Below are positions 8,122 through 54,852 of a stretch of 64,000 nt of DNA, piece by piece. A program made the position numbers and the translations under genes. Under the pieces are notes generated by a model. That model ran no database searches, was not told where the DNA came from, and saw only the letters and a program-made list of their open reading frames with translations. The stretch is from contig OZ365116.1 in the NCBI GenBank assembly GCA_977030845.1, positions 12,958,001 to 13,022,000 on the forward strand, given 5' to 3'. How positions within the stretch are numbered: position 1 is the first letter of the stretch; each line of letters starts with the position of its first letter. The DNA is from Fimbriosthenelais zetlandica (taxonomy: Eukaryota).

Positions 8122-8307
8122 AACCTGTACTCCACTGCTGCGATTTTGCTTGCAAAACTACTGCGACAAAGGTGATGCTTGTGTCTCAACACAATTAATA
8201 AATTCTGTGTCCAAGGCCTTAATGCCGTCCTCCACTGACACAGTTTTCATTACGACACAAACATCACCTTTTGTCATAAGCAAAATCGCAGCAGTGGAGT
8301 CCAGACT
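8122..8307 (+). mobile_element. MITE family C (Harbinger-like), copy 1
   Basis: TIRs ...ACTCCACTGCTGCGATTTTGCTT / AAGCAAAATCGCAGCAGTGGAGT, with inner arms TGATGCTTGTGTC / GACACAAACATCA. TAA on the right flank. Four other copies are in the window. Confidence 0.85.
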
Positions 8308-9086
8308 TAAGATGATACCATCCAATGGACTGAACGTGGGGCTTCATTTTAAAACCTGCTGCGGATTCATTTAAGGAATGACCCTCCAGAATGACCTTAT
8401 GGTCGGTATATATACTTACTAAATACATACATGTACCGTACAATGTACCCCTTGAAACATACCCCTACAACCCCCCCATCTCCTCCTCAAAAAATACTCA
8501 CAGACTTGGCTCCAAGTGACACCATTTTAATGTTCAAGTGATGGATGGGGGGAAGATGCATCCGGCTTTGGACTCGGGGGGTGGGGTGGGGGTGGGGGAT
8601 GGGGAAGAGTAACGGGAATTGTATGAGGAGAGAGGAGGAGTCGGATTACAACCCCGTTGCCTGTCCTCCTGCATGGTAAAGCCTTGTATCTTGTGCCAAA
8701 GAAGGGCAGTGACACCGACACGACCAAATGTATTTTTTGTGCCCCATTACTTATCAATCCGCAAAACCCCGAGTTTCATGTGAGGAAAATGTGTATGTAT
8801 TCAGGTGAATGTAGTAAGGATCTTGACCGAATGAATGAAACAGGGGCTTATGATGATCAAGACAAGATTATATGGTAGGAAGGAGATGGCAGGAGATGGT
8901 CCTGCCTGATGGATAGTTGAGAGAAGTTGCAGACAGCTGGATCAGACATCGCCCAATACACAGTCACAAGTGTCCTTGTCATTCTTCCCCTACAACATTT
9001 TCCCATTTTGCAGATTCTTTATCTTTCTTCTGCATTCTGTCAGTCTTTTAAATTTGCAGGATTGTTTCCCATAAGCCTTGCAGTCT

Positions 9087-9122
9087 GTCCTACTATCTGT
9101 CCTACTATCTGTCCTACTATCT
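9087..9122 (+). repeat. 12-bp tandem repeat (GTCCTACTATCT) x3
   Basis: Seen directly. Confidence 0.85.
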
Positions 9123-9277
9123 TTCAGTTATAAATGGAAGTGAACTCGCAGGACGAGGTTGAGATCATTAATGGGCCAGAGCATCATGATGTCCATGTTT
9201 GACTATGTCAAGACAGGATGCTTACACATATAGTCCCACTCTTTGTTTACTGTACTTTCCATATCCATTCATGTTCT

Positions 9278-9512
9278 GTGCAGAGAGAGGGAGAGAGAGA
9301 GAGAGAGAGGGGGGGGGGGAGACACAGAGAGAGAGAGCCAGAGAGAGAGAGAGAAAGAGAGTCAGAGAGAGAGAGAGCGAGAGAGTGAGAGAGAGATAGA
9401 GAGAGGGAGATAGCAAGGGAGAGAGAGACAGAATCAGAGAGAGAGAGAGTCAGAGAGAGCCAAAGAGAGAGAGAGGATAGGGGTGGGGAGACAGACAGAC
9501 AGACAGACAGCT
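9278..9512. repeat. Compound (GA)n / (GACA)n microsatellite
   Basis: Seen directly. It explains the overlapping ORFs 9199-9416. Confidence 0.9.
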
Positions 9513-9967
9513 ACGGAGAGTAAAAGGTAGAGAAGAAATGAGTGCAAAAGTTGGAATGATGAGACTATAAGCAATATGGTGCTAAATATATATCCAATCA
9601 TCTGCAAGAGTTGGAGGCTTAACTGAAGATCGTGTCCATCTGTTTTCTTAGGACTGATCTCTGATTCTTTAGGACATGTTACAACGGGAAAGAGGAGTTA
9701 GAGATGGATAGAAAGGCTATAATGTTTAAAGAGCCCTTGTGGACCTAACCCTATTTATATACATGACAAACTCTTGCCCACGGCAGGAAAAGGATGAGTG
9801 CAAGCGGACCTGGAAGGTTCACCATGTTAACAGTTCATGTCCAAGTGTCTGCTGAAAGAGTATCAAACTTCCTGTTTGACTAATCAGTGTTACTTCACTT
9901 CATTTTTGTCATTTTTCCAAACGTCGTATGATATCCATTCTTTTAGCTGAAAGTGTGTCCTCTTTAA

Positions 9968-10159
9968 AACCTGGAACACACTAATGCGATTCTTCATGCA
10001 ATCCGTCGGCATCCGAGCTCCTATTTCTAATGATATCCAATGATTGAAATTGTGTCAGTGGTTAGCCTTAAAATTACAAATATTGGGTGTGAATAGAAAT
10101 ATAGTTTGATAGGTATCGGATGGAGACGGATAGAGAATCGGATTAGTGTGTTCCAGGCT
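9968..10159 (+). mobile_element. MITE family A (Harbinger-like), copy 1
   Basis: TIR (A)CCTGGAACACACTAAT.CGATTCT / AGAATCGGATTAGTGTGTTCCAGGCT, with TAA on both flanks. Confidence 0.9.
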
Positions 10160-10586
10160 TAATTCTACATGAATTACAGTGAATAAATATCGTTTACAAT
10201 CTCTTATACCTTATTTAAAGTCTATGTCTTAACAAGTTCTAGCAACTGGCAGAAAATATCCAAAAAATTGCCAGGCCAGCAGTGACTATGAGACACTTAT
10301 GGATTAGTAGTATTTTGATTGGTGTATTTGATATCATGTGTCTTCAGTGGATGAGAACCTGATGTTGGTAGAGATGGAACCCTAGAGTGATTCCTTTTGA
10401 CGCATGCCTGGCATATTTTTACCTAATGATCATTTGATCCCTGCTACCATCAGACGTAAACATACTTCAGTCTATTTCAAATGAGTTTGTGAAAAGCGAG
10501 ACAAAATTCCTCCCAATATCAGGGTATTCATGACAAATATTTACAACATAGATTTTTTCATTGGTAAACATATTGACTCAGGTTAG

Positions 10587-10880
10587 TTTTCCTTCCAATG
10601 GTTTGTGTATTGGACTTTATTTCGAAGTCAATTTTTCTGTAGAGAGTTTTCCAAAAGGTTTGTGTATTGAACTTTATTTCGAAGTCAATTTTTGCATACA
10701 TGTAGATAGTTTTACAAAAGGTTTGTGTATTGAACTTTATTCCGAAGTCAATTTTTCTGTAGATACTTTCCCCAAATGATTTGTGTATTGAACTTTATTC
10801 CGAAGTCAATTTTTCTATAGATTCTTTCCCCAAATGGTTTGTATATTGAACTTTATTCCCAAGTCAATTTTTCTGTAGAT
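10587..10880 (+). repeat. Minisatellite, 5 units of 57-63 bp
   Basis: Core GGTTTGTGTATTGAACTTTATTCCGAAGTCAATTTTTCTGTAGA starts at 10600, 10657, 10720, 10778 and 10836. Confidence 0.92.
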
Positions 10881-12569
10881 CCATTGGCTTACAGATATTA
10901 TCCCCCTTTCGGGAATTTACCAACAGTCAAATCCTTTAGCTAATTTAATGAACTGGCATTTCCTCCTTATTTGTTTACAGTGCACACAATCCTATATTTA
11001 AAGGGGTGATATTTGTTCCTTGTCAAACTCACTTTTTCCGACAGATTCTCCTCACCTTTCCTTCGTGGGAGGAGGAACAGTGTTTGATACCCGTACCCTA
11101 TCATTCCCCAGATAAACGTGTGCACAGTAACTCTAAGCTACCATACCCCACAATGGATGCCGAACCTATACCCCTACACATAGACTCCCCATAGGACCTC
11201 AGGTATTTTATCCAGGTACCACGACAACTGAAACTCTGGGTCATCCCTATCCATCACTTGCCCCTAGGGCTCATTTTTTATCTCAACATCCAAAAGGGGA
11301 ACAAGGCACCCTAGTGAGAAAGAAATTATTGTTTGATCAAATTCGAAAGGTTCGAGAGCCAGCACTTGGCTGATTCATTTGGTGGGCCAGTAAAACATAG
11401 TAAAGGTATAGGATTTGCTCTGAGTGGAACTAACCGACCTTTTACCTACACACATCAACCCCCCTTAAGGATATATTTTTCTGGGTGAGAGTCTGATCGG
11501 TTTTCAGGGGAGTGACAGTTGTCTTTTCTGGTTGAGGCTGAGTATATTTGTCTTCTGTGAAACCCAAGTCTGGCAGGTTGCAGTGTAGAGAGCACCGCCC
11601 ATGTAAGGGAGAGGAGGTGGGCACACATATAGTGGATGTCACCTGTGACGAACGGAGAAAAACCAAGGTTGTGTTCGAGAAGTCAAAAGTTAATCCTCAA
11701 ATCGGGTGTTAGTCATATATTATCTGCCGAGAAGGATATGGGAATCGGTGTTTGACAAACTGGACAGATTTACTCTATGGAAGATGAAAGGTCTATTGGA
11801 AAGTTGAACTTGGGTCTGAAAGTTGAAAATTAAGAAGACCACGAGGTTAAAGGTTATTCCCACCATTGCCCTTTTTAAAATGTCACTGACCTGAGAAGCT
11901 TGCCAACATCCTTGCTCCAAGTGAACAAATCTGTCCATGTGCAAACCGATTGTCACTGAGAAGTTTCATATTCACTTGCCTTCAAACTACTTACATTCCT
12001 GCAAGTAGATCTTACTGATAAAACCATTACTTGTACATACAAGATTTGTCAAGAAACCCTAACATTGGTGTGAAAATACAACAGAAAAGGTGCAAGACGT
12101 GATAGAAAACCCACCAAATTAAATACCTATCATTATGAAGGAAATTGACCTTTTTTTGTCAACCCTTTCAGGGGATCTTTAGTAGCTGGATTTTTCTTCT
12201 TCATGCCCTAGTAGAGGTCGCTTGTAGTAGAGCAATGGTCGTTAGCTCTAGCAGCCTTGCGGCCATGCCGTTAGGTATGTGTAAATCAAACTTGAAGTGA
12301 CTTTTGAGATTTGTTTACCTGAACTTAAAAGGTCCGTTTAAGTTTGCGAAAGAGTACAAATCAGTGATTTGAGGGTCAGTCTGTAGTCAACCAGGGCCTT
12401 CTCACTATATCTACAAATTACAGCCTTGTATTGACTGAGTCAAGAAAATTACCCCCACCAGAACACTACCTACAACTGTATGAACCCTACTATACACACT
12501 GTCACTTGTCTCTGTTAGTAAACCAAGTCATGTTGGTTACGCTAAGTGCTTTGTTTTATCTTGAGGCTA

Positions 12570-12836
12570 ATAGCCTGAACCCATTGAGCTACGATCTCCC
12601 TACAATCTGCTTTACGATCCAATTACGATTAAAAATTTTCAAAGTATGTGGATATACCTACTGAAAAAGTATGTGGAATGACCCTAAAATCATAGTCCTG
12701 TGTGCTCTGCGTTTTTTTCATGGATCAGAAAACTCTGCGGTCTCATTTTGAGCATGCTCAAACAGATCGTAGGCAGATCGTAGCTCAGATCGTAGGGAAA
12801 TCGTAGCTCAGATCGTAGCTCAGTGGATTCAAACTA
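12570..12836. mobile_element. MITE family D (267 bp, TAA TSD, subterminal AGATCGTAG repeats)
   Basis: Left TAGCCTGAACCCATTGAGCTACGATCT pairs with the reverse complement of the right end (TAGTTTGAATCCACTGAGCTACGATCT). TAA at 12567-69 and 12837-39. Five (C)AGATCGTAG units on the right are mirrored by CTACGATCT-like units on the left. Confidence 0.75.
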
Positions 12837-15800: not shown

Positions 15801-16386
15801 TAATTTCAACTGATCAAAGGTATCTATTCAATACCAATTTGACGGATAGTACCAAGAAGTATCAGTCAATCACAATTGATTTATAGAGTTCTGAACGAAC
15901 ACCGATCGTTCGACTACTGCAGAATCCAGTCCATGAACTTTGTGTCCTTTTGATTGATGGCAATTCTTTTAGGGAAAATCCCAGACCCGGTTATGTTTTA
16001 ACCTATTTTATAAGAGAGAGAGAGAGGGATCGTTTATCATGTGATAATGCATTCTTGAATGGGTTAGACAGGAGCCTGCCGGGGGACAAGCAGGCAAATC
16101 AGCCAGCTCCATGATACTGGGTGGGGGCGGGGGGTGGGGGAGGAGTGCTGGGGTTAGACATGGGAGAATGATTAGAGCCCAGAGGCTACTCTGTAACAGT
16201 TGGTCTAACAGGAATGTCCCGATGACAAATCGTGCAAAATTGATTCATTTTCATTCCTCAAAGAAAAAAAAACATTTTCCACGAAAAATACTTTAGACTT
16301 TATAAAGTGTGTACATACTTTTTTAAAGCAGTTACATTATCTTGTATCTCCTTCGTTTTCTGGGCAACTGTCTTTTCTTTTCGTTG

Positions 16387-16589
16387 AGCCTGGTCTCCAC
16401 TGCTGTGATTTTGCTTACGACACCTCTGCGACAAAGCTGATGCTTGTGTTTCAATGACAAATTTACCAGTGGAGGACGGCCTTAAGTCCTTGAACACTTG
16501 GGCCACAATTTACAAATTTTAATCCTACACAAGCATCACCTTTGTCGCAGTAGTGTCACAAGCAAAATCGCAGCAGTGGAGACCTGACT
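16387..16589 (-). mobile_element. MITE family C, copy 2 (203 bp)
   Basis: TIRs AGCCTGGTCTCCACTGCTGTGATTTTGC / GCAAAATCGCAGCAGTGGAGACCTGACT. The core is inverted relative to copy 1. Confidence 0.88.
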
Positions 16590-17290: not shown

Positions 17291-17572
17291 AATATGCCCC
17301 TGATCGTTCTATTTCTGAGCACTCATTGCTAATGTCCAATTACAATAACCTGCAAGGCTCATCATCTATAGGAACGACAATGAGTTATAGTCTAATTGAA
17401 AAGCTCATGTATCATACATGTTTTTCTCGTGTCACTCATGTTTATCACAACATGTTTGCCGTGTAACAGATACCATGTGTTTTTGAGGTAGTCTGACGTA
17501 CTTTGACGGAGGTCTTTGACACTGCCTGTGTGAGTGTCAGGAACCCGGAATAAGGCCTGATATATAGGCATT

Positions 17573-19504: not shown

Positions 19505-19707
19505 TGCTGGCCACACACAGAGGCGATTTGCCCAAGCGATGCAGAGCGATTGTATATTTCTAGTCACACCCAATGCGTTTAATTTTGTCAGTGGTTAGCC
19601 TTAGCTAGGTTTAAATGACTGTTAAAATTACAAGCATCGGTTGTGACTAGAAATATATACTATCGCTCTGCATCGCTTGGGAAAATCGCCTCTGTGTGGG
19701 CCTGGCA
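19505..19707 (+). mobile_element. MITE family B (Harbinger-like), copy 1 (203 bp)
   Basis: TIR TGCTGGCCACACACAGAGGCGATTTGCCCAAGCGATGCAGAGCGAT / ATCGCTCTGCATCGCTTGGGAAAATCGCCTCTGTGTGGGCCTGGCA, with TTA TSD. Confidence 0.92.
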
Positions 19708-20419: not shown

Positions 20420-20616
20420 AGGCATTACTCCATTTCTGCGACTTTGATTCCGACAAAGGTAATGTTTGTGTCGCAGTAAAAAATGTGCCAGTGAAGGACG
20501 GCCTTATAAGTCCTTGGACCAAAATGTCCTTGGTCCTTGGAATAAATTGATTTTATTTCGACACAAGCATCACAGTATAGTGTCGCAAGCAAAATCGCAG
20601 TAGTGGAGTACAGGCT
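20420..20616 (-). mobile_element. MITE family C, copy 3 (eroded left end)
   Basis: Right end GTGTCGCAAGCAAAATCGCAGTAGTGGAGTACAGGCT|TTA, core CCAGTGAAGGACGGCCTTA, degenerate left TIR from ~20427. Confidence 0.8.
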
Positions 20617-22948: not shown

Positions 22949-23151
22949 AGCCTGGAACACACTAATCCGATTCTCTATCCGGATTCTCTGTCCAAAACCA
23001 TATTTCTCTTCACATCAATTGCTTGTAATTTGAACAGACCTTTACACCTAGATAATACTAACCACTGACAAAATTTCAATCATTGGAAGTCATTAAAAAT
23101 GGAAGTTCTGATGGCGACGGATTGGAGAATCGGATTAGTGTGTTCCAGGCT
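22949..23151 (-). mobile_element. MITE family A, copy 2 (203 bp)
   Basis: Perfect 26-bp TIR AGCCTGGAACACACTAATCCGATTCT, TTA TSD, inverted core. Confidence 0.93.
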
Positions 23152-23490: not shown

Positions 23491-23693
23491 AGCAAGGTCT
23501 CCACTGCTGCGATTTTGCTTGCGACACTACTGCGACAAAGGTGATGCTTGATTCACAATAAAATTTATAAAATTAAGTTGAAGTGTCCAAGGCCTTAAGA
23601 CCGTCCTCCACTGGTATTTTTTTTATTGTGACACAAGCATCACCTTTGTCGCTGTAGTGTCGCAAGCAAAATCGCAGCAGTGGAGTCTTAGCT
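23491..23693 (+). mobile_element. MITE family C, copy 4 (203 bp)
   Basis: TIR ...CTCCACTGCTGCGATTTTGCTTGCGACACTAC / GTAGTGTCGCAAGCAAAATCGCAGCAGTGGAG... Confidence 0.9.
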
Positions 23694-24170: not shown

Positions 24171-24885
24171 TGTTTCCTGGCAAGTATTTCAGGGGCGGAT
24201 CCAGCAATTTGAAGAGGGGGGTTCGAATTTGAGTTGGGTTGGGAGCAATGTCCCCGTACATACCTATAGAAATGAAGAAAAAAATCACATATAAATAAGA
24301 CCGTTCAGTACTGAAACCTACATATATGGTAGACTCAAACTGTCCCACCGACTTTATTTGACCACATTTTTTCCAGATCTTTTATTTCTTCCTTCCCCCC
24401 CCCATTGAATTCGCCATTACATCTTTAACGGAAGTGGAAATGGAGTGGAAATGGGCATAAGGAAGTGAGAGGTGGAATTAGGGAAATAAGACAATTGAGT
24501 TGGAAAAATGGGACATTGAAGGATTATAATCTATATGTGTGTGGGAGGAGGATGGGGGATGACGAGGAAGAAGAATGTTACAGCATGAATTGTCACATGA
24601 TTCATTCATTTCATCATGTAGACCATGTGCTCCCACTTCCTTATATGATTTTACAGACAAGGAGACTGAATTCTTACCACATCAGTCAAACTTTACCATC
24701 TGACACTAGTACTCAACCAGCGTCTGTGAGGGCCACCCTCACACACTGAGTATAAGTTATGTGGGATGGCAAGATTGAATTCACACTTGAAAGAAAAAGA
24801 GAGGATGTTCAAATGGGATGCTTCATTCCAAAATGTGATTCAGGCTGGAACCCCCTACACACTATTAGCCTCCTTAATAATCCCC

Positions 24886-25080
24886 GAAACACACTAATCC
24901 GATTCTCCAATCCGTCGCCATCCGATCCCCTATTTCTAATGATATCTTGAGATTGAAATTTTGTCAGTGTTTAGCCTTACTTCAGTGCAACGGACTGTTC
25001 AAATTACAAGCATTTGGTTTGAATAGAAGTATAGTTTCGGATGGCGTTGGATAGAGAATCGGATTAGTGTGTTCCAGGTT
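24886..25080 (+). mobile_element. MITE family A, copy 3 (left terminus eroded)
   Basis: AACACACTAATCCGATTCTCCAATCCGTCGCCATCCGA ... AGAATCGGATTAGTGTGTTCCAGGTT|TAA. Confidence 0.88.
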
Positions 25081-25518: not shown

Positions 25519-25729
25519 AGACTGGAACACACTAATCCCATTCTTCAATCCATCGCCATCCGATCCCCCATTTCTAATGGCATCCAATGATTGAAATTTT
25601 GTTAGTTGTTTGCCTTGGGTAGGTGTAAAGGTCTGTTCAAATTACAAGCATTTGGTGTGAATACAAATATAGTTTCGGACAGCTATCGGATGGAGCCGGA
25701 TAGAGATTCGCTTTAGTGTGTTCCAGGCT
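25519..25729 (+). mobile_element. MITE family A, copy 4
   Basis: AGACTGGAACACACTAATCC ... TAGTGTGTTCCAGGCT, with a full family-A core. Confidence 0.88.
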
Positions 25730-32409: not shown

Positions 32410-32594
32410 TGCTGGGCCCACACAGAGGCGATTCTCCAAGCGATAGCTGCGCGAAACTATATTTCTAGTCACACCCAATGCTTGTAATTTTAACAGTCCT
32501 TTACACCTAGCTAAGGCTAACCACTGACGAAATTACAAGCATTGGGTGTGACTAGAAATTTAGTTTCGCGCAGCTATCGCTCGGAGAATCGCCT
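32410..32594 (-). mobile_element. MITE family B, copy 2 (A/B-intermediate, right end truncated)
   Basis: TAA|TGCTGGGCCCACACAGAGGCGATTCTCCAAGCGATAGCTGCGCGAAACTA ... TAGTTTCGCGCAGCTATCGCTCGGAGAATCGCCT. Confidence 0.88.
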
Positions 32595-34505
32595 ATATAT
32601 ATAGGGGCACTGCATAACCATCATGAAACGGTCTGAGTGCTATATTGTGAATGTACGGTAAGAGGGACAGAAAGGGCGTGTGTAGATAGAGATGTAAAGG
32701 ATTTGCATGGAATTTTGTTCTACATATCTTTGGAAGCTGATGGCGATAACGACTGGGAGGGAACATAGTTAGATCTCTATGAGATACTGACTCTATGTCA
32801 CTCATCTCAATTTAAAGCGCCAGTTACCAGTGATGTCTATATACCCATAAAGAAGAGTATCAAATGATAACTTTATCATAAATATTGACAGTTCCTTTAA
32901 TATCGGTACCATGATGTCCCAACATTATCACTGGGAACATCCATGGGGTGTGCATGCACCTCCTTAAGTTGATGTTGGACTGATATAAAAAGGAAAAAAT
33001 GTCCATGCTGCTGCTGGGGGACCCATCCTAAAAAGGGCAATATGGGGCACTTTTATAGAAGCCCAGAGGGTACTTAAAGAATGCCAGTGTTATTATATAT
33101 ACACCCAATGTAGGACGATCATTTTAAGTGGACACGAGCCACCCTTTCTTCTTGTTTCTCATCTTTTTTCCCTCTTTTCCTCCTCCTCCTCCTCCTATAT
33201 GTATTATTCCAGTAGGTTTTACCCTCGCCTTTTCAATGCTTACTCATCCCTTGCCTGTAAATGTACAACTTCTGGATTCTCTGTTTCTTTTGGCATGGCT
33301 CACCTTTTTGGTGCTTGGAACCTTTTATCTCAGTAGCTTTCTAGTTATCTCCTTCATATTATAGGGTGTCTCTGGATACTTTTAGCATTTAAGTTAAAGG
33401 TTGGTGTAATTATGCAATTCTGAAATGGGGAATCACCGAAGGGAAGGAGTTCTGTGGAAACTATTTGACTGTTACATGAGATCTGTGAAAGTTCTTGTGT
33501 GTGTGGTTGCTTCCAAGTGCTTGTATGTCAACCACAAATCACGCACGGTACCATTGACATCCGGAAGCAGGTGTCGCAAACAGTATCTTTCCTCTAAAAC
33601 TTTTGATTTTCATATTCTAACGAGTATATATAAAGGTTTCTTTCATTTCTGACGGTATTAAATCAAATCAGTGTTAAGAAAACGTTGGGGTTTTTTAAGA
33701 CGATCGTTTTCTCAGAAGATCTCTTATTTTGTAAACTTTGTTTGAAATCGCTTGAGTGTTTGCAACCAAGTAAACAAGACCGACTTTGTGATTGGAAGCA
33801 GCAAAGATAATAGAATGAATTTCATTCTATGCTCATTCGAAGCAGATAGATCCCATTCCAGATTTGCGGGCCCTAACTGCAAACCACAGATTGCCAAGAC
33901 ATGCAATTCTAAATATATGAAAAATATGAATCTTGTATTTTTCTCTTCTTTATTAACACAAAATATAAAGTCTATATCTTTTGGCAAGTCGGAATGTATG
34001 GAACTTCTGAAGGTCAGGTCTGTGGGGAATGGGGTGGAATGGGTAGCTTATAGCCCCGCGCTTAGCACGTGCATGCGTGGGTTGAACAAAATGATGTTTG
34101 CTAGAGGAGTGGGAGAACCCCCACCTACACAACACTCGCTTCTTGCATACCTCCCCAATGAACAGACCAAAAATGAAAGAAATTTGTCCATTTATTCATT
34201 TTTGAGCATCAGGATGGATAGTCCATCACTTCCAAATGACCATTCAGAAAAATCATCCAGAGACATTCTGGAGACAATATTAATTAAGAATGTCTCTGAA
34301 AACTGTACCTGTTAATAGCTATGTTGTCACTCAGAAGTAGACCTTCATAGGTGGATCATGGTAGGAGGTGGGGTCAAGCGGGGTCACGACCCCCTTTCAG
34401 ACATGAATTTTTGACGCTCAAATAGTAAATTTTTGTGGGTGGAAGCCTTCCCCCTCGGCTTCTTTAGAAAATGTTGGATCCATTCCTGATCTCCTAATTG
34501 CTACA

Positions 34506-34995: not shown

Positions 34996-35178
34996 AGCCT
35001 GGAGCACACTAATCCGATTCTCCAATCCGTCGCCATCCAATCCCCTATTTCTAATGACAATTAAAGATTGTAATTTTGTCAGTGGTTAGCCTTACTTATA
35101 GGTGGGGAGGTCTGATCAAATTACAAGCATTTGGCGTGAAGAGAAATATATTTTCGGACAGCTATCGGATGGAACCGA
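34996..35178 (+). mobile_element. MITE family A, copy 5 (right TIR missing)
   Basis: TTA|AGCCTGGAGCACACTAATCCGATTCTCC plus core. Similarity ends at ~35178. Confidence 0.88.
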
Positions 35179-36809
35179 ATTGGAATGAATTACAAGAATA
35201 AATTTTATGTTCTTCACTCATTATTTCCACCAATCTGCAACAACAGAAGTAGAAATTGCACCCGAAAGGTCCATATAACTAGACCCACACCCTCCGGATT
35301 ATTGCTTGCTTGTACCAATATATTATGTATTAATTTATTGAGCCTCAGCCTCACGGCAATATCAAGTAACCAAACGTAATGGTAGAATGTGTTCACGTAA
35401 TGCATTTATTTGTATGCATAGCTCTTACGTGTTCTCTCTTCCATTCACAGGTTTGTTTTATGAGGAGATAAAAACCTTGTTTGATAAATGAGGCTATTTA
35501 TGAGTATGAACATGATATTGTGCTCTCTCCGCCCTCACCGATCACAACTCTCATATCTCATCCTATTCATATATTAATAGAGAAAGGTATGGGTGTTGAG
35601 AGATGGTTCAACATCACATCAAACCAGGTATTACTTAAAGTAGGGGGAGGAGATGATGAAGAAGTGGATGACACCTGGGACTTATGAGTAACTTAGATCA
35701 CAGGGTATTCAACCGACTGTACTGTCTTTTTCTATGATAATTTTCGACTGATTTTTATGAAAAATGTGTAAAGTTTTACGACTTGTGATTCCCAGCTATG
35801 ATTCATTCATTCAGACAATATCCCCCCGTTATATTGATCAGAGGAAAGTTGTTTGAGAGAATGATGTGAACAATAGATCTAAATGTCCATGTTTCTTTCT
35901 TCATTTCATTTCATACAGTTCCCATACACTGCTTACCAAAATGAGCCAAAATGTTTTTTCTCAAAGCTTTAGTCCTTTGGTGAAGATGACAATAATGTAC
36001 AATGACATTGTACATGGTAGAATTGTTCTAACACCTGCTACATTATATTGAAAACAAAACCGTGAGTTTTCTCTGCTCATCTTGTGAAAATAATTTGCTC
36101 TTCGCACCTTCCCGCCCCTCAATAGCACCTTTGGAAAGGTGTCAAATTGTGGTTGAATCAAATTGCATTATACATATTCCATTACTAAGCAATGTAATGG
36201 GTGATATAGTTTCCCCACATTAAATGAAATCAACAGCAAGTTCACATACACACCGAGGTCAATGTGCACCTGTGTTGGGGGCAAATCATCAAACTTTGAT
36301 TTAACTACAGTAAGGAAGAAAGATCTAATGTATGAGCAAATGTATATCATTATTTTGAACTCCATAAATCCTCAGAGATTACCCCTGACTGTCTTCCTAT
36401 AATCACCAAGATGAGAGATTGTATCTAACATATAGATTAAGATACATAGAAGCATGTATATCATGATAGACTACCTGTAGCTCATTATGTGATGACCTCA
36501 GGTATTGTGATGGGAGTATAACAATGATGTAGATGATCACTACTATTTATATACAAGGGCTTGTCAGGACTCAAAGGGTCACATTGATAGATGGGCAGAG
36601 CTACTTCATGAGCTGTGGTCACACCAAACCAACCGACCGGCCGGTTGATATGAATCTAAATCAGATTGCTTTTAAGCAAACTATAAGTGCTTGGTTATTC
36701 TGTTACAAGAATGAGCAGATATTTAAAGTGCGATCGGTGACTTTCACGGTTCAAAGTCCAGTTCTTTATATAGTTGGTCGTTGATTTGGTCAGCGCATCC
36801 CTGGTCTAA

Positions 36810-37014
36810 TACCGGAACCACACTGAGGCGATTTTCCCAAGCGATGAAGAGCGATATAATATATTTCTAACCACACCCAATGCTTGTAAGTTTGTCAGTG
36901 GTTAGCCTTAGCTAGGTTTAAAGGACTGTTAAAAATACAAGCATTGGTTGTGACTAGAAATATATACTATCGCTCTGTATCGCTTGGGAAAATCGCCTCT
37001 GTGTGGGCCTGGCA
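36810..37014 (+). mobile_element. MITE family B, copy 3
   Basis: TAA TSD. TACCGGAACCACACTGAGGCGATTTTCCCAAGCGA ... TCGCTTGGGAAAATCGCCTCTGTGTGGGCCTGGCA. Confidence 0.92.
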
Positions 37015-38890: not shown

Positions 38891-39137
38891 TTGAGGGATT
38901 TAGACATTATACCATTACATTACACCTGCAGGTTTCATAGTTAGCTTCCTCATCCTTCTATGCTATCCTAGAGTTCCAGATGAGTTCCACAGAGCCTTTC
39001 ATCCTTCTCAGGTATAGCCAACACACTGGAAAAGGATGACTACAGTCTCTCTCATTGAACGATGCATGATACTGCTTTTGAGGGTATGATAGTTCATAAT
39101 GTATAGAGGGAGACTGAGATACATTGGGTAGACTATC

Positions 39138-39565
39138 TGTGAAGTGTTTTCACTAAATGAGTCTAAAAGTCGCAAAAATGGATTTGGAGTTAGATTACCA
39201 GCGATCCAATGATGTATAGCATAATATTATGTGAAAAATATGTACATTTTTAATAACATTTCAAAATATAAAAGTAGTGACAGCGGGAACTAGATAAAAT
39301 ACCCATTTCAGACAATTCTCTGTCCAAGTGAAAGAAATCTTAAAGGGACAACACGCACAAAGTTGAACTTTTCTCGATTTCACCCACAAAAATAGTAACA
39401 TATCCTTGCTTTTATTGCGAAAATGCTAAGAAATATAAGTGGCTTGTGTACAACGATTTCAAGCCTGTAGCGCTGAATGTCATGGTGCGACTTTAAACTC
39501 ATTTAGTGAAAACACATCACAGCACATTGTGCGACTTTAGACTCATTTAGTGAAAACACATCACA
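39138..39565. mobile_element. Non-autonomous TIR element (family F) with a tandemly duplicated right TIR
   Basis: Left TGTGAAGTGTTTTCACTAAATGAGTCTAAAAGTCGC (39138-73) is the inverse of GCGACTTTAGACTCATTTAGTGAAAACACATCACA, present twice (39487-521 and 39531-565, 44-bp period). Confidence 0.75.
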
Positions 39566-42125: not shown

Positions 42126-42320
42126 AGCCTGGAACCCACTAATCCGATTCTCCAATCCGTCGCCATCCGAAACCCTATTTCTAATGACATCTAAAGATTG
42201 AAATTTTGTCAGTGTTTAGCCTTACTTAGGTGTAAAGATCTGTCCAAATTACAAGCATAAATATAGATTCGGACTGTCGGATGGCGCCGAATAGAGAATC
42301 GGACTAGTGTGTTCCAGGCT
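42126..42320 (+). mobile_element. MITE family A, copy 6
   Basis: TAA|AGCCTGGAACCCACTAATCCGATTCTC ... GAGAATCGGACTAGTGTGTTCCAGGCT|TAA. Confidence 0.92.
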
Positions 42321-43064: not shown

Positions 43065-43262
43065 TGCCGGGCCCACACAGAGGCGATTTGCCCAAGCGAT
43101 GCAGAGTGATAGTATATTTCTAATCACACCCAATGCTTGTAATCTTGTCAGTGGTTAGCTTTAGCTAGGTTTAAAGGACTTAAAATTACCAGCATTAGTT
43201 GTGACTAAAAATATACTATCGCTCTGAATCGCTTGGGAAAATCGCCTTGTGTGGGCCCGGCT
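43065..43262 (+). mobile_element. MITE family B, copy 4
   Basis: TTA|TGCCGGGCCCACACAGAGGCGATTTG ... AAATCGCCTTGTGTGGGCCCGGCT|TTA. Confidence 0.92.
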
Positions 43263-45263: not shown

Positions 45264-45496
45264 TGCCGGGCCCACACAGAGGCGATTTGCCCATGCAAGC
45301 GATGCAGAGCGATAGTATATTTCATAGACAAATGTTTATGGTATATTTCTAGCCACAACCAATGCTTGTAATTTTAACAGTCCTTTAAACCTATCTAAGT
45401 TTAACCACTGACAAAATTACAAGCATTGGGTGTGTAACTTGAAATATACTATCGCTCTGCATCACTTGGGAAAATCGCTTCTGTGTGGGACCTGCA
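45264..45496 (-). mobile_element. MITE family B, copy 5 (with ~30-bp internal insertion)
   Basis: TTA TSD, family-B TIRs, inverted core, extra CATAGACAAATGTTTATGG segment. Confidence 0.9.
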
Positions 45497-46159: not shown

Positions 46160-47060
46160 TTTTTTAGTTTAATGTCAATGAACTTCCATTTCCACCCCAA
46201 TTGCTCTTTGTCTTGCATCTACCAGAAATCTAATAGGAGTCTTTGAAACCTACCAATGTAGAAATTCGCCAGAGTAATTTAAATTTAAACAAAAGTTTCT
46301 GACCTCTGTCCAAAACTCACTTCCTCTTTCACCTTTGTTCCTTTTCCGAAATGACCAAATTTGGTGCTCTGATACCATCTGAAACATACCACCCTAGTCC
46401 ATTATTTAATGATTTAAGACAATTGCTTTAAGTTTTCATCCTCCATTTGTACCCCTTAAATTCTTTCTATAAAGGTGTGGGTGACCCTATATCCCCTCTG
46501 GTGGCCAATTAGTCACCTTTATAGATGGCCAGCCAAGCATCATGACACCACCTGCCGTCCTCTCGTCCTTTCCGATATCCCTTTTTAAAGCCTGGAACAC
46601 ACTAATCCGATACTCCAATCCGTCGCCATCCGATACCCTATTTCTAATGATTTCTAAAGATTGAAATTTGGTCTGTAGTTAGCCTTACCTAGGTGTAAAG
46701 GTTTGTTCAAATCACAAGCCTTTGGTGTGAATAGAAATAGTTTTGGACAGTTATCGGATGGTGTCGGATAGAGAATCGGATTAGTGTGTTCCAGGCTTAA
46801 TAAGGAGCAGGTTGAGTGATTTCTATTGGGCATACCAATGACATACCGGAGGTTCCATCAGCTGGGGCTTTGTTTATGACCTCTGATCATCTCCCAGTTA
46901 CAACTACTTGTAGAGGCAATCCTGGACTGCCACCAACACCTGTTGAAGAATTGGTCTTGAATTGGTCTTGGATTTGTTAAGGCCACTCACTTACTTCAAA
47001 CCTGGCATCAGTTACCCCGAGATACTTGTATGAGATGTCAGATTTAAAGAAAGTTTCTTT
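46160..47060 (-). pseudogene. Degenerate L1/Tx1-like ORF2 C-terminal relic, interrupted by MITE A
   Basis: Minus strand YKYLGV (47030-47013), then GR*xxVINK and LRYV motifs across frameshifts, and IWYQxxKF... near 46380. Heavily disrupted. Confidence 0.35.
46589..46797 (+). mobile_element. MITE family A, copy 7
   Basis: TAA|AGCCTGGAACACACTAATCCGAT ... ATCGGATTAGTGTGTTCCAGGCT|TAA. Confidence 0.93.
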
Positions 47061-48883: not shown

Positions 48884-49894
48884 TGTATTATTCGTATTGC
48901 AATAATTATGATTCGGGATGCAATGGCCTTGGCTTTTCTGGGGATACCAGTTGGTAACTTTATTATGTTTCTGGGGATCCCAATTTGTAACTATGTTTCT
49001 GGGGATACCATTTGGTAACTATATGTTTCTGGGGATACCAATTGGTAGCTATGTTACGTTTCTGGGGATACCAATTGGTAAAGATATGTTTCTGGTGATA
49101 CCAATTGGTAAGTCTATGTTTCTGGGGATACCATTTAGTAACTGTTTCTGGGGATCCCAATTTGTAACTATGTTTCTGGGGATACCAATTGGTAACTATG
49201 TTGCAGTTGTTCGTACAGCAATCTATTTCCTACCGGGACACCAATGAGGAAGCACGTGAGGTTGTTTGTCTTCCTCATCCTGTAGCTAACAGCAGGCGTT
49301 CAGTCTTAAGTTATGAACTGTTATTTTCTCGCCTTATTTTGTAAACAGGCGCAATGGGAAAGAGAAAACTTTGATGTGAAGCACAAAGCACTGGCCTGCA
49401 ACTAGATACTCCTCCAGACTAAAGAAGTAATTATTTAAATTCAGATCTCCGCAAGCTGTCTATTTAATTCTGATATGATGCACTGAATATTGATGGGACC
49501 TCAGAGGAGGCGGTGAGGGGAGGGGAATTTGTGGTATTTGAGGAGGAAATCTTGTCTATTGAGTCTATTGAGAATTAGTGCGAGTTTATGATTTGTATAT
49601 CCCCTTATTGTACGATGAACCTCGCCAATGACGAGGTTCAGCGAGGGCAACGTCGCCGAGCGTTTGCTTCGTTCAAGTACTGTTTCCTTTAAAATAAAGT
49701 ACTGGACAGTTGCTTGTTATTGCATTGACCAAGCACTGTTTTTTCAAAAATATTCCTTGTACAATAGAATCGCCCGACGAAGGTACCCTCGCCGACCCTC
49801 GCCATAGTTACCAATTGATATCCCCAGAAACATATATTTAGCAATTGGTATCCCCAGAAAAGGGCATTGCAATTATTGCATTACGAATAATACA
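48884..49894. mobile_element. Foldback-like element with 24-bp TIR and asymmetric 29-bp subterminal arrays
   Basis: TIR TGTATTATTCGTATTGCAATAATT / AATTATTGCATTACGAATAATACA (23/24). About 9 units of TTTCTGGGGATACCAATTGGTAACTATG lie on the left (48935-49200) and 2 inverted units on the right (49806-49860). Confidence 0.8.
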
Positions 49895-50097
49895 AATCAT
49901 TTTGAAGACCCTACATGACCAATGGGAGGAATAGCTCTATAGACAAAGTTAATGATTATAGATGTCTATTCGGTCAGCTAGTAGGACTCTATAGTAGTTA
50001 TGAGGTTTAGAATCTGGAGGCCAGACGTACTGGTGCCTGCGGCTGCCTGGCTGTCCACTCCACTATTTCATATAAACCACTTTATATGGTTTGTGTA

Positions 50098-50392
50098 CAC
50101 TCTAAGACCAACCAAATGTTGGATGGAGTGGCCATTCAATACAAATCATATATAGCTCAAAACAATGAGGCTACAGAGTGCATTGGTATATCGATGGTTG
50201 TATCCATTTTACTCTATGGTTGAATGGATTGAACTTAGAGTAAAATGTTCGTTTTACTCTAAGGATTCACTCACTAATCGACAATTGTTGTAAATGCAAC
50301 AGTTAACTAGCCTTACTTCTGTGAGAAAAGAGAGAGGTCCAAATATTGGGAATCCAACCGAAAGTACATTTTGTCATTTTGGGTTTAGAGTG
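50098..50392. mobile_element. Candidate CMC/EnSpm-like MITE (CACTCTAA termini, TA TSD)
   Basis: TA|CACTCTAA ... TTAGAGTG|TA, with internal TTTTACTCTA/TAGAGTAAAA motifs including a perfect 12-bp stem (50205-16 / 50236-47). Confidence 0.55.
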
Positions 50393-51649
50393 TAAAAGAA
50401 TGGCTCCAATATAAAAGAGTTTTTTTCATAAAATATATTTTATCGATCCACATGAAGAAGGATCTCACGAGAAGAAACATTTCAACTAACATAAATATCA
50501 GTTTTACTAGGTTTGGGGTATGGATCTTGCCAACAACTCATTGGATGAATTCCATGAAAAAGATACATAAAAAAATACTAAATGTGATTATCTCGGGTCG
50601 AAACAGTATATCAAAAGTTGATATAAATGTATATACAGCTTTGATATACTTCTGATCAGTCAGTCTCTGTTTGTGTGTATATATGTTTACCAGCCAGAAT
50701 GAGGGGCCAACAAGATATATAGCTAAATGGTCATGTCTATGATAGATGTACAGCGTTCAGAGAATCAAAATATCTATTCATGACGGCTTCACGCCATATT
50801 GGATTTCATTTGATTCAAGCAAACAGGAAGATTGACTGGTTGCTGCGGCTAAATTCTAGGGTACGTCTCATAGCCGCTTTAACAAATTACCGAAACAAAT
50901 CGACTAACAAGCCAGCCTCAATACGATACTCTACTTAAGTCCTTTCAAGCTTTTAAAAACTCGAATTTTAAGTAAAGTTGTAGCAAAGTAATCGCAGCCC
51001 TTATCGGGGCAGCCTGTTGGCATACCTGCTTCAAAATTCTTTTGTATTCGGCCGGTTGTATGATCGGTTAAAAGGCAGAGTATGCTTTCTTCCGCGGCAA
51101 ATATATAACCCTCCGATTCCTCCCCTTTAATTATAATATATTTTAGTCCTATTTTGCAGCGTTTTACTGTTCAGGGAATTTAATCAAAGCTTTGGCAGAA
51201 ATCCAAAAGTTACAATTTTTATGAGGATTAAGATTTTTCAGAGAATCATACACCTTTGTAGGTCTGTGTATATATATGGGATGTTAGCTCAGTTGTTGGT
51301 CAGTAGAAACACATAGCCCCAAGACACCTCAATTGATGTCCATCTTGACCATTACGATGTCTAATTTCCCAGCACAGGTACAAATGGAAGGTATGCAGAC
51401 AAAGGTGGACACAGGGCAGAACAAGTGGTCAGGACCTATGTTGTATATACTCGCCCTATGTGTATGTATACAGGCTCGTGGCCTTAGGGCGCCAAATACC
51501 GAATATACTTAAAGCACTGTAACATTCCTAGCCCAGTCAATGAAAGCTATCTGCATCAACAGCTTACTCTTTATGGAGGAAAAGAAAAAGGAAATTCACT
51601 GTATTGAGACCTGAATTTGAAGGTTAACTTGACGTCCTTGTCTCCTTTA

Positions 51650-51852
51650 AGGTGGGACTCCACTGCTGCGATTTTGCTTGCGACACGACTGCGACAAAAG
51701 TGATGCTTGCGTATCAACAAAATTGATGAATTGTATTTGAAGTTTCTAAGGCCTTAAGGCCGTCCTCCACTGGTACATTTCTCATTGCAACACCTGCATC
51801 TTATTTGTCGCTGTAGTGTCGTAAGCACTGTCGCAGCAGTGGAGTCCCACCT
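51650..51852 (+). mobile_element. MITE family C, copy 5 (203 bp)
   Basis: TTA|AGGTGGGACTCCACTGCTGCGA ... TCGCAGCAGTGGAGTCCCACCT|TTA, a perfect 22-bp TIR with TSD. Confidence 0.92.
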
Positions 51853-52163
51853 TTAGCGAATAGAGAATATTTAATGACCCATGGTACATGATCAATATCT
51901 GATACTTTTCACACTTGGGTTGTAAAGTGACATGGAATTTGATTGTAAAGTTCCATGTCCTCCTCTTTTTTAATATTTTTTTTTTGCACTGGAGGATGTG
52001 ACGAGGGATATATTTATACGAGATTAGATGCAGTACTTAGGATGGTTCGAACTGAAGCTGATCAAAAGTATGGGTCTGTTAAAAGAGGGCGAAAGAGGAA
52101 TGATATCGTTAGGGTACGGAAACAGACCAGGGGGTGAGAGGGTGCAATAACAACAGTTGTATA

Positions 52164-52322
52164 NNNNNNNNNNNNNNNNNNNNNNNNNNNNNNNNNNNNN
52201 NNNNNNNNNNNNNNNNNNNNNNNNNNNNNNNNNNNNNNNNNNNNNNNNNNNNNNNNNNNNNNNNNNNNNNNNNNNNNNNNNNNNNNNNNNNNNNNNNNNN
52301 NNNNNNNNNNNNNNNNNNNNNN
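52164..52322. other. Assembly gap (159 N)
   Basis: Run of N in the sequence. Confidence 0.99.
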
Positions 52323-54309
52323 GATATGCTAAAGGATATATCTATAGGGCCTATATATGGTATGAAATAATGAAAAAAGCAAACGCAAGGCGACACTTTA
52401 TTATGGAACCTAAAAATCATTTTATTATATTTCTTTAATAAATATGATGACCAGGTCAATTCAACATTACAAGATTTTATTGAAAGGAGGAAACATTTCT
52501 TGTGGCTCTTCTCCATGTGCACCACTGAAGGTGTGACAGAGTCGAGGCCCACCAAGTTTTTCTATTTTCAATAACACCAACTCCCCTTCATCCATCACCA
52601 TTATTCTACGTGTGTCTATAAGATCTGAAAGCTTTTTCTTTGCGCCACAACATTCAGAAAAACTCCCATGTACTGCATATACCAGTTCTTCAACTCAGAT
52701 GAATTTTACTTTACATATTTTAGAGCATATATGACCATTGACTGACAATGATATTGTGATTAATTGGAATTGCCGCCAATAGACATGATTAGGGTATATA
52801 TTCATCAGAGGGCACCACTGGTGGTATGAGTGACGTCATTGATCCCAAAATCAACAAATATTTCCTTGAAATAACTACCTAGATATTCTATATTTTTTCA
52901 TCAAATGCATAAATTTCAGAGTAAATAATTCATTTTTTTGTGTTTATAAAACACTACATGATACTAGTTTTTTCTCTTTAATGAAATATAAAATAATTAG
53001 ATTAAAACTGTGCTGATATAGGTGTAACCCAGGCACCAGTCTATAATGTTCCCACTCACTCTCACCTGGTCCCCTGCTCTCCTCAAAAACATCTCCGCAT
53101 TCCAGACTGAGGCTCAAATTTCACCTCAATCTTTCGTTCGGCGATTAATCCCCGCGGATTGTGAGGGTAAACTATTTCAGGTAAAGCTTTGGTCGGGTCA
53201 GATTTAGCGAGGAATAAATAGGCCCGTCTCTGATCTCAGGCCGAATCATATGCCCCACCGACTAAGAAATGGTTATTGTGCTTTTAAACCATAAGATAAT
53301 ATTGGTTTTATGCAAACTTCTAGATTAATAAACTCTTGATATTGGCATGCACGACCTGCGCAGGAGGTACACTATACTTTTCTTGCAGCTTGCCTTGCTT
53401 TTCTTAAATTGAAATATTCATAATAAGGCATCGTATTGCCAATTAAAATGAACATCATTTGCCATTTTGACTTTGATACATTTAATGGATTGGATGGGAG
53501 TTGTCAAGTGTTCAATCTTGGTGTAAAGATATATACATGTATTTTTTGAGGTACATGTATCACTATTTCTGTTCGGATGCAAGCCCAGTCACACATTGGC
53601 GCATCTTAGTCCCTATATAGGATCTTTATTCTATACTCATTGCTATAGGACCTAATGGCCCTAGAATGCTTCTCTATGATTATTGGTATTAAATGTCTTA
53701 AATGAATTATTACGAATCCACCCTCATACATTTTACCGCTCCTTGCTTTATATTTTTCTTCATTACATGCATGAACAAGCAAAGGTACATATTTCAGATT
53801 CCATGTTGAAACCTGATACTTCTACAATCAATAAAGATGAGAATTTATGCTAAATCAGAGGGACAATCAACTTCCTTTGAGGTCCAAATCAATATAGCTT
53901 GAATGGCCTTTTTGTTCGATAGAATATGCTGATGAAAATGATTAGTATATATACATATTTACTATTGATGTGATTATGAATGTGTCAATTATACCTATGA
54001 TTTAATAACAGGGCTGAGTTGTGCTTTGTGCCGGGGTATCAAATGTTGTAGAGTGTCATATTAATTAAGTTGTCAGGCCACAAATTGTACCTCTTTATAT
54101 AAGTGGAGGGGTCTCAGTTATGATTATGCCTGACATAAATCCATGTCACCCTTGGTTGGCCTCACAAAACTCGCACCGGGGGTAATGACAGTGTGTTAAA
54201 GTCTGTTAAATCTTCATGAAATGTATAATGCAAAAGGAATCGGTCTATAATCATTCCTGGTGGCTCATCTTTTCTCGTTTTTTTCATCAGCTTTTATTCC
54301 CCTTTCTCC

Positions 54310-54570
54310 TCCCACTTTCCTTTCATCTTTCTCCCTCCATCTTTCCTTTCCATGTTCCTCCCTCCATGATCTTTCCTTTCTATCTTCCTCCCTCCATCTT
54401 TCCTTTCTATCTTCCTCCCTCCATCCTTCCTTTCCATCTTCCTCCCTCCATGATCTTTCCTTTCTATCTTCCTCCGTCCATCTTTCCTTTCTATCTTCCT
54501 CCCTCCATCTTTCCTTTCTATCTTCCTCCCTCCATCTTTCCTTTCTGTCATCCATCCTTTCTTCCATTCC
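54310..54570 (+). repeat. Polypyrimidine minisatellite (27-30 bp unit CCTCCCTCCATCTTTCCTTTCTATCTT)
   Basis: About 8 units. It explains the four overlapping ORFs 54216-54748. Confidence 0.92.
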
Positions 54571-54647
54571 TCCCTCTTGTCTTTCTCTTCTCTGCATGTT
54601 TTCTTTCTCATCGATGTCCTTGCCATTCCATCCACCTTTCCCTCTAA

Positions 54648-54852
54648 TGCCGGGCCCACACAGAGGCGATTTCCCCAAGCGATGCAGAGCGATATTATAT
54701 ATTTCTAGTCACACCCAATGCTTGTTATTCCATCAGTGGTTAGTTTAAATAGGTTTAAAGTACTGTTAACATTTCAAGCATTGGTTGTGACTAGAAATAT
54801 ACTATCGCTCTGCATCTCGTGGGGGGCAAATCGCCTCTGTGTGTGCCTGGTA
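54648..54852 (+). mobile_element. MITE family B, copy 6
   Basis: TAA|TGCCGGGCCCACACAGAGGCGATTT ... AAATCGCCTCTGTGTGTGCCTGGTA|TAA. Confidence 0.92.

What the first reader, a model, noticed from the sequence alone, without database searches (positions are those of the whole stretch)
8122..54852. Three MITE families share one terminal grammar and one length: five copies are exactly 203 bp
Seen: copies at 16387 (C), 19505 (B), 22949 (A), 23491 (C) and 51650 (C) are each 203 bp, and most other complete copies are 192-211 bp. The TIRs differ but keep CAC at positions 12-14 and CGATT at 20-24 (A AGCCTGGAACACACTAATCCGATT, B TGCCGGGCCCACACAGAGGCGATT, C AGCCTGTACTCCACTGCTGCGATT). B and C both carry an inward-facing ATGCTTGT/ACAAGCAT pair, and all three have GCCTTA centrally. 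Established: TAA/TTA TSDs mark PIF/Harbinger, which use a transposase plus a Myb/SANT-like DNA-binding protein. Inference: a cohort mobilised by related transposases under selection for end-to-end distance (helical phasing of the synaptic complex or a nucleosome-sized unit), with the fixed-position motifs as protein contacts.
Basis: partly seen in the sequence, partly recalled or inferred. Interest (0 to 1): 0.7.

Follow-up and report, generated by a model that had tools for sequence, protein, structure and literature searches.

The report
Related hairpin MITEs, no length selection
The window is crowded with small non-coding jumping elements of three related families whose ends are diverged versions of one 46-base end module. 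Their similar sizes, including five copies of exactly 203 bases, come from shared ancestry and chance, not from selection on length.

Summary
The copies, coordinates and end motifs are real: 18 copies of families A, B and C lie between 8122 and 54852, and five measure exactly 203 bp.

"One length" fails genome-wide.
- Modal lengths are 211 (A), 201 and 203 (B), and 211 plus 202-203 (C).
- A fourth family, D, has the same kind of ends and a median of about 226 bp.
- The five 203-bp copies have three different origins. About 2.8 such copies are expected in the window by chance (P = 0.16).
- Indels do not compensate each other, and off-mode lengths are not in 10.5-bp phase.

The "terminal grammar" is real, and it is homology.
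- The first 24 bases agree in register at 16-17 positions between families, and the first 46 at 24-26.
- Each arm carries three or four CGA-core motifs near positions 20, 32/33 and 43, about one helical turn apart, with family-specific neighbouring bases.
- A and B align over their full length. Their 10-bp length difference is one extra motif unit in A.

TWA flanks, a palindromic S-W-C-TWA-G-W-S target and at least 150 DDE_Tnp_4 hits in the genome point to PIF/Harbinger.

One side observation is unexplained: about 27% of young insertions have inverted rather than duplicated flanks.

The parts
9968..10159 (.). family A copy, 192 bp
22949..23151 (.). family A copy, 203 bp: the 211-bp consensus minus one private 8-bp deletion that removes a motif unit in the four-unit arm. 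TAA/TAA flanks.
24881..25080 (.). family A copy, 200 bp (11-bp deletion in the motif array)
25519..25729 (.). family A copy, 211 bp, the family's modal length, no indels
34996..35182 (.). family A copy, truncated at one end (profile positions 1-185)
42126..42320 (.). family A copy, 195 bp
46589..46797 (.). family A copy, 209 bp, TAA/TAA flanks
19505..19707 (.). family B copy, 203 bp: the 201-bp consensus plus 2 bp in an ATATA run. TTA/TTA flanks.
32410..32614 (.). family B copy, about 205 bp, one end degenerate (9 of 20 mismatches)
36810..37014 (.). family B copy, 205 bp
43065..43262 (.). family B copy, 198 bp
45264..45496 (.). family B copy, 233 bp (26-bp insertion)
54648..54852 (.). family B copy, 205 bp
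8122..8307 (.). family C copy (older C2 type), 186 bp
16387..16589 (.). family C copy, C2 type, 203 bp, the consensus length of that subfamily
20420..20616 (.). family C copy, 197 bp, diverged ends
23491..23693 (.). family C copy, C2 type, 203 bp
51650..51852 (.). family C copy, C2 type, 203 bp, TTA/TTA flanks. Both ends carry the same private change (AGGTGGGACT).
12571..12836 (.). family D copy, about 266 bp. Its ends have the same parts (AGCC.G, CAC, CGAT) and arrays of 4-5 TACGAT units about 11 bp apart.

Best explanation
A, B and C (with D as a further relative) are non-coding, hairpin-forming MITE families of the Tourist / PIF-Harbinger type.

They share by descent a terminal module of about 46 bases at each end. 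It holds a terminal GCC.GG, CAC at 12-14, and three (in one arm of A, four) short CGA-core motifs at about 20, 32/33 and 43. The motifs sit about one helical turn apart, so they face the same side of the helix.

Inferred: these are the docking sites for the DNA-binding partner of a Harbinger-type transposase, the Myb-like ORF1 protein, which brings the transposase to the ends. The family-specific bases next to each CGA core (A TCCGA, B GCGAT, C TGCGA, D TACGAT) would reflect diverged binding specificities or unit duplication.

Shown: lengths near 200 bp are inherited from master copies and drift by small steps.
- A (211) differs from B (201) by one motif unit.
- The largest young burst, C1 (211), is C2 (203) plus an 8-bp insertion.
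- D is about 226 bp.
- After insertion, copies decay neutrally with a deletion bias.

The five 203-bp copies in the window are a coincidence of three different histories.
For: Lengths:
- Exact-end pattern samples, n = 50 per family, give A mode 211 (203 in 1 of 50), B modes 201 and 203, C modes 211 and 202-203.
- D has median 226 and sd 22.

Origins of the 203s:
- A 22949 carries a private 8-bp deletion.
- B 19505 has +2 bp in an ATATA run.
- The three C copies have the C2 consensus length of 203.

Homology:
- A and B share 147 of 211 columns, z = 18.7; their internal parts give z = 31.
- The first 24 bases agree at 16-17 positions and the first 46 at 24-26, in register, between A, B and C.
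- CG cores lie at 20, 32/33 and 43 in both arms of all three families, with a fourth at 53 in one arm of A.

Superfamily:
- Flanks are TWA. The held sample has 33 direct against 11 inverted pairs, Fisher p = 0.006.
- 784 of 1080 family C copies genome-wide have direct flanks.
- The half-site is S-W-C-T-W-A, with chi-square p from 4e-3 to 2e-46 per position.
- At least 150 DDE_Tnp_4 matches pass the Pfam cut-off, many as open frames of 300-570 aa.
- One locus was read and encodes HTH_Tnp_4 plus DDE_Tnp_4.

Established knowledge: PIF/Harbinger elements have a 3-bp duplication, an extended target preference, and two proteins, with ORF1 binding the ends (PMC2836001).
Against: - No autonomous element with these ends was found, so the link to a particular transposase and to a Myb-like protein is inference.
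- C's internal part is not detectably related to that of A and B (z -0.1 to 3.0), yet it has nearly the same size. Descent explains that only if the internal homology has eroded.
- A and C1 share the modal length 211, and B and C2 share 203.
- 27% of young insertions lack a direct duplication. The textbook mechanism does not predict this.
Confidence: 0.75

Rival explanations
1. There is a real length optimum. Master copies of this clade amplify best at about 200-211 bp, through helical phasing of the two end complexes or wrapping of about one nucleosome. Lineages with unrelated interiors therefore converge on the same size.
For: - The interiors of B and C2 are not alignable (z = -0.1), yet the consensus lengths are 201 and 203.
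- A and C1 both have mode 211.
- Only 62 family C elements span 293-452 bp, against 2026 that span 132-292 bp.
- Motif spacing of about 11 bp shows that helical phase matters within an arm.
- A published hypothesis holds that internal nucleosomes bring mPing ends together (PMC9921582).
- From my own knowledge: IS50 mini-elements show a 10.5-bp periodicity (Goryshin et al. 1994).
Against: - Family lengths differ significantly (Kruskal-Wallis p = 5.6e-15), and D, with the same kind of ends, is about 226 bp with sd 22.
- The biggest recent burst (C1) is 8 bp longer than its parent, which is not a helical multiple.
- Off-mode lengths are not in phase. A's cluster sits at +4.5 bp, in antiphase; B, C and D show no phase concentration.
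- Indels do not compensate: mean |net| is 11.5 against 11.3 under the null.
- There are only three independent lineages. With 5-7 subfamily lengths falling within 15 bp, exact coincidences are expected.
Confidence: 0.1
2. The elements belong to a superfamily other than PIF/Harbinger, and the TWA flanks mislead. Candidates are a TA- or TTAA-targeting group such as the Kolobok element at 57682-64000, or another 3-bp-duplicating group.
For: - 27% of insertions have inverted-complementary flanks.
- No partner element was identified.
Against: - Flanks are T-W-A at 106, 109 and 107 of 118 half-sites, and the direct association is significant.
- Readings as a TTAA or a TA duplication do not fit the flanks (read directly).
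- The left end of the Kolobok, TTAA then AGGCAACGGCCC, is unrelated.
- The target half-site S-W-C-TWA matches the 9-bp palindromic PIF target (the consensus CWCTTAGWG is from my own knowledge; the 9-bp preference is in PMC2836001).
Confidence: 0.07
3. C is not a descendant of the same ancestral MITE as A and B. It arose independently, by internal deletion or end capture, from a related autonomous element. Only the 46-base end modules are homologous, and the similar size is chance.
For: - The internal regions of C against B or A are at or near shuffle level.
- The end modules are clearly homologous.
Against: - A against C2 internal gives z = 3.0 (P = 0.016).
- The blocks ATGCTTGT, CAGTGG and GCCTTA occur in the same order in B and C2, which hints at eroded homology.
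- This rival changes the history, not the verdict on length selection.
Confidence: 0.35

Closest known systems
Tourist-like MITEs mobilised by PIF/Harbinger elements (mPing with Ping/Pong in rice; mPIF with PIF in maize)
   Same: Short non-coding elements with terminal inverted repeats, TTA/TAA flanks, an extended palindromic target, bursts of near-identical copies from a master copy, and a host genome rich in DDE_Tnp_4 transposase genes.
   Different: About 200 bp against 430 bp for mPing. B and C are almost perfect hairpins. A quarter of insertions show inverted flanks. The autonomous partner is not identified here.
Harbinger3N_DR / Harbinger3_DR of zebrafish (reconstructed; ORF1 Myb-like protein binds the ends and recruits the transposase; PMC2836001 summarising Sinzelle et al. 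2008)
   Same: It gives a model for how short end motifs could act as docking sites for a separate DNA-binding protein.
   Different: No protein or binding was examined here. From my own knowledge, that element duplicates CWG, not TWA.
Subterminal repeat arrays of Ac/Ds, En/Spm and P elements (own knowledge)
   Same: Several short copies of a motif related to the inner part of the terminal repeat, spaced along the subterminal region and bound by the transposase.
   Different: Other superfamilies. Here the array is compact (3-4 units in 46-56 bases) and kept in register across families.
Length and helical-phase dependence of very short IS50/Tn5 derivatives (Goryshin et al. 1994, own knowledge), and the mPing size and nucleosome hypothesis (PMC9921582)
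   Different: The signatures expected from such a constraint were tested here and not found.

Membership tests
Tourist-like / PIF-Harbinger MITE | Short, non-coding, with terminal inverted repeats | tested here: met
   186-233 bp. Inverted arms of 27-95 nt. None of the ten longest window ORFs scanned (113-187 aa) has a Pfam hit between 8 and 55 kb.
Tourist-like / PIF-Harbinger MITE | 3-bp target site duplication TWA | tested here: met
   Direct TWA pairs number 33 against 11 in held copies (Fisher p = 0.006), 784 of 1080 for C genome-wide and 36 of 50 for B. Caveat: 27-28% have inverted flanks.
Tourist-like / PIF-Harbinger MITE | Extended palindromic target preference around the duplication | tested here: met
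   Half-site S-W-C-T-W-A from 118 half-sites. Positions -6, -5 and -4 deviate from background at p = 1.6e-7, 4e-3 and 4.5e-7.
Tourist-like / PIF-Harbinger MITE | Ends shared with an autonomous element that encodes a DDE_Tnp_4 transposase and a Myb-like ORF1 | not tested
The one transposase locus read (L051) has no such ends.
Tourist-like / PIF-Harbinger MITE | Harbinger-type transposase genes present in the same genome | tested here: met
   150 scored matches to PF13359, all over the cut-off, out of 478 candidates. L051 encodes HTH_Tnp_4 plus DDE_Tnp_4.
Length- or phase-constrained short transposon | Same modal length in families that share the end module | tested here: not met
   Modes are 211, 201/203 and 211/203 for A, B and C, and the median of D is 226. 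Kruskal-Wallis p = 5.6e-15.
Length- or phase-constrained short transposon | Deviations from the mode fall in steps of about 10.5 bp | tested here: not met
   Rayleigh test at period 10.5: B, C and D are not significant, and A clusters in antiphase at +4.5 bp. Deletions of 9-13 bp are common, and at least some (the 10-bp deletions in L008 and L010) remove one motif unit by slippage.
Length- or phase-constrained short transposon | Internal indels compensate to restore the length | tested here: not met
   In 21 copies with two or more indels, mean |net| is 11.5 against 11.3 after shuffling events (P = 0.57). Three copies net to zero against 1.0 expected (P = 0.07).
Kolobok-derived MITE | TTAA duplication and ends like the resident Kolobok | tested here: not met
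   The flanks do not fit TTAA. The Kolobok end at 57685 is unrelated.
Foldback-type (palindromic) MITE | Most of the element forms one long hairpin | tested here: met
   Consensus against its own reverse complement: B 184 of 202 and C 169 of 228 identical alignment columns. Folding z = -27.7 (B), -23.0 (C) and -11.0 (A).

The most novel reading that the evidence does not exclude
Master copies of this MITE clade are under an optimum for end-to-end distance of roughly 200-211 bp. The optimum would be set by how two arrays of helically phased binding sites are brought together. That would explain why lineages with unrelated interiors (B and C2, A and C1) sit at the same lengths.
Probability: 0.08. 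Interest if true: 0.6.

Novelty: new member of a known kind. Interest (0 to 1): 0.27.

Why it matters
The headline idea does not hold, so this region is best read as ordinary, if dense, MITE biology.

Two things are still useful.
- The in-register end module, with its family-specific motif variants, is a natural experiment in how binding-site arrays and their binding proteins diverge together. This becomes testable once the partner elements are read.
- The large, reproducible minority of insertions with inverted flanks is unexpected for a 3-bp-duplicating transposase. It could reveal something about the cleavage and joining chemistry of PIF/Harbinger elements.

Tried and rejected
I did not try to obtain those letters through another tool.
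- **L051**, the one Harbinger locus read, has no end of this kind and no clear inverted ends. tblastn with its two proteins found nothing in the window or in the held flanks.
- **Literature search for the end strings** gave one 15-base match to a triatomine microsatellite primer that diverges straight after. I treat it as chance.
- **Rfam** gave no family in the window.
- **A degenerate search for further abundant families** with CAC-N5-CGATT and A/T at position 19 found only 16 elements, mostly mutated A, B and C copies.
- **Mirrored private changes in both arms** number 6 against 1.3 expected (P = 0.002). This is weak, because some sites are CpG and unsampled subfamilies cannot be excluded.
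- **Nested insertion of C1 copies** at the central CCTTAAGG of older C copies: only half copies could be matched.
- **Read laying, protein homology, structure and atlas tools** were not needed.
Full report
**What is there.** The window is G000:C27:12958001-13022000 of a 447-Mb eukaryotic assembly. The other 12 complete copies measure 186-233 bp. The gap at 52164-52322 lies 312 bp from the nearest copy end (51852), so no measurement depends on it. I did not examine or fill it.

**Lengths across the genome.** I searched the assembly for exact end cores separated by 100-260 bases.
- This found 390 A, 212 B and 2026 C elements, with none in the reversed-pattern control.
- The first 50 listed per family are in genome order, so they are not chosen by length. 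They give the following:
  - A: mode 211 (12 of 50), exactly 203 in 1 of 50, sd 12.4.
  - B: modes 201 (12) and 203 (10), sd 11.6.
  - C: mode 211 (22) and a second group at 202-203 (10), sd 8.5.
- A second B sample agrees, with 201 in 7 and 203 in 8 of 50.
- Family consensuses built from fetched copies are 211 (A), 201 (B), 211 (C1) and 203 (C2) bases long.

So 203 is the consensus length of one C subfamily and one of two common B lengths. It is not the length of A or of the main C burst.

**Where the five 203s come from.**
- The A copy at 22949 is the 211-base consensus with one private 8-bp deletion in its motif array.
- The B copy at 19505 is the 201-base consensus plus 2 bp in an ATATA run. 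Two other 203-bp B copies carry their +2 at different places.
- The three C copies are old, individually diverged members of C2. They share only the subfamily gap pattern.
- With genome-wide frequencies, 2.8 copies of exactly 203 bp are expected among the 17 complete copies, and P(>=5) = 0.16.

**What the shared "grammar" is.** In register and without gaps, the first 24 bases agree at 16-17 positions between A, B and C, against a shuffle mean of about 6 (no shuffle of 20,000 reached it). The first 46 agree at 24-26 positions, against 11.8 (P <= 1.5e-4).
- Invariant in all three: GCC at 2-4, GG at 6-7, CAC at 12-14, CGATT at 20-24.
- The CGATT is the first of three CGA-core motifs. CG lies at 20, 32/33 and 43 in both arms of all three families, spaced 10-13 bp apart, about one helical turn.
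- The bases just 5' of each core are family-specific and the same in all units of a family: A TCCGA, B GCGAT, C TGCGA.
- One arm of A has a fourth unit at 53. That unit is the 10-bp gap in the A/B alignment and explains 211 against 201.

A and B are sister families. They share 147 of 211 columns (z = 18.7), and the interior alone gives z = 31.

C shares the end modules but not a detectable interior: z = -0.1 against B and 3.0 against A. The words ATGCTTGT and GCCTTA shared by B and C are therefore not evidence by themselves. Two 200-base sequences are expected to share about one 8-mer, and the palindromic arms make any match appear twice.

**A fourth family.** Family D has a copy at 12571-12836 and two more in L005.
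- Its ends have the same parts (AGCC.G, CAC, then CGAT), shifted by 1-2 bases, with arrays of TACGAT units 11-12 bp apart.
- Genome-wide there are 86 exact-core elements, with median length about 226 (228 if the extra end base is counted), sd 22 and no sharp mode. Unit number varies between copies, and some ends are tandemly duplicated.
- Lengths differ between families (Kruskal-Wallis p = 5.6e-15). Only A against C is not different.

**Direct tests of length selection.**
- Compensation. Among 21 copies with two or more indels, mean |net change| is 11.5 bp against 11.3 when events are shuffled among copies (P = 0.57). Deletions remove 320 bp and insertions add 100 bp, as expected for neutral decay.
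- Phase. Offsets from the family mode show no concentration at 0 modulo 10.5. A clusters at +4.5 bp, in antiphase, and the other families show no clustering. Deletions of 9-13 bp are frequent, and at least some of them (the 10-bp deletions in L008 and L010) remove one motif unit between direct repeats.
- The most successful recent lineage, C1, is its parent plus 8 bp.
- Longer C elements are rare: 62 span 293-452 bp against 2026 that span 132-292 bp, and many of the longer ones look composite. Amplification from one master copy predicts this and needs no constraint.

The residual argument for a constraint is that unrelated interiors give nearly equal totals: B 201 and C2 203, A and C1 both 211. 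With only three independent lineages and 5-7 subfamily lengths inside a 15-bp range, exact coincidences are likely. I give this reading about 0.1.

**Which transposon superfamily.**
- Flanks are T-W-A at 106, 109 and 107 of 118 half-sites. Positions -6 to -4 read S-W-C, which gives a palindromic S-W-C-TWA-G-W-S target.
- PIF/Harbinger elements are known for a 3-bp duplication, an extended target (9 bp in plants) and two proteins, with ORF1 binding the ends (PMC2836001). That the plant consensus is CWCTTAGWG is from my own knowledge.
- The genome holds at least 150 matches to DDE_Tnp_4 over the Pfam cut-off, many as uninterrupted frames and several as identical multi-copy groups. One locus was read and encodes HTH_Tnp_4 plus DDE_Tnp_4.
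- No autonomous element with these ends was identified. The roles I give to the motifs are therefore inference.

**Structure.** B and C are nearly perfect hairpins, with folding z of -27.7 and -23.0; A is less so, at -11.0. No Rfam family matches in the window.

**An unexplained side result.** Among family C copies with perfect 14-base ends:
- The flanks are TTA..TTA in 386 and TAA..TAA in 398. These are direct, 72.6% of 1080.
- They are TAA..TTA in 235 and TTA..TAA in 61. These are inverted-complementary, 27.4%.
- B shows the same fraction, 14 of 50, but not the 4:1 asymmetry: 6 against 8 (Fisher p = 0.004).
- Four of nine near-identical C1 copies are of the inverted kind, so this is not mutational decay.

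It does confirm a large minority. Untested ideas are in the notebook:
- A donor-derived overhang that leaves a central mismatch.
- Template switching across the palindrome.
- A second, blunt mode of integration.

**Comparison and verdict.** These are new or at least unnamed members of a known kind: Tourist-like, foldback-shaped MITEs. I had no repeat library to check names against. The shared end module and its phased motif arrays resemble the subterminal binding-site arrays of other cut-and-paste elements. The idea that nucleosomes or spacing help bring MITE ends together exists as a published hypothesis for mPing (PMC9921582), but nothing here supports it.

Noticed in passing
whole genome (family C and B copies); held copies L016-L030: About 27% of insertions with perfect ends have inverted-complementary flanks instead of a direct 3-bp duplication. 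For C the counts are TAA..TTA 235, TTA..TAA 61 and direct 784. For B they are 14 of 50, without the 4:1 asymmetry. Young C1 copies are included, so this is not decay.
   Followed up: partly
window 12571-12836; L005:266-497 and L005:2330-2558: A fourth MITE family (D) has related ends and arrays of TACGAT units 11-12 bp apart. Unit number varies between copies, and some genomic copies carry tandemly duplicated end modules (for example C1:1895317-1895590).
   Followed up: partly
L017:1493-1703, L018:1493-1703: Young C1 copies sit exactly at the central CCTTAAGG of older C fragments, and C copies cluster and abut one another. The family's own centre seems to be used as a target. Only half copies could be matched.
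   Followed up: partly
window 51650-51852 and other copies: Some copies carry the same private change at mirrored positions of both arms (for example AGGTGGGACT at both ends of 51650). There are 6 such rare mirrored changes against 1.3 expected. This hints at arm-to-arm conversion in the hairpin, but CpG sites and unsampled subfamilies could explain it.
   Followed up: partly
L051:3124-4530 (+) and L051:5656-7017 (-): An intact Harbinger-type transposase gene (469 aa, HTH_Tnp_4 plus DDE_Tnp_4; the same 469-aa frame is listed at four places, three with identical match scores) lies next to a 454-aa frame with a YqaJ-like recombinase/exonuclease domain. No Myb-like gene and no clear inverted ends are visible in the 8.5 kb read.
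   Followed up: no
window 39137-39565 and 63317-63742: Two other inverted-repeat pairs (arms 30-32 nt, 91-97% complementary, 324-368 nt apart) look like further MITEs with unrelated ends. The second lies inside the Kolobok element.
   Followed up: no
   Followed up: no
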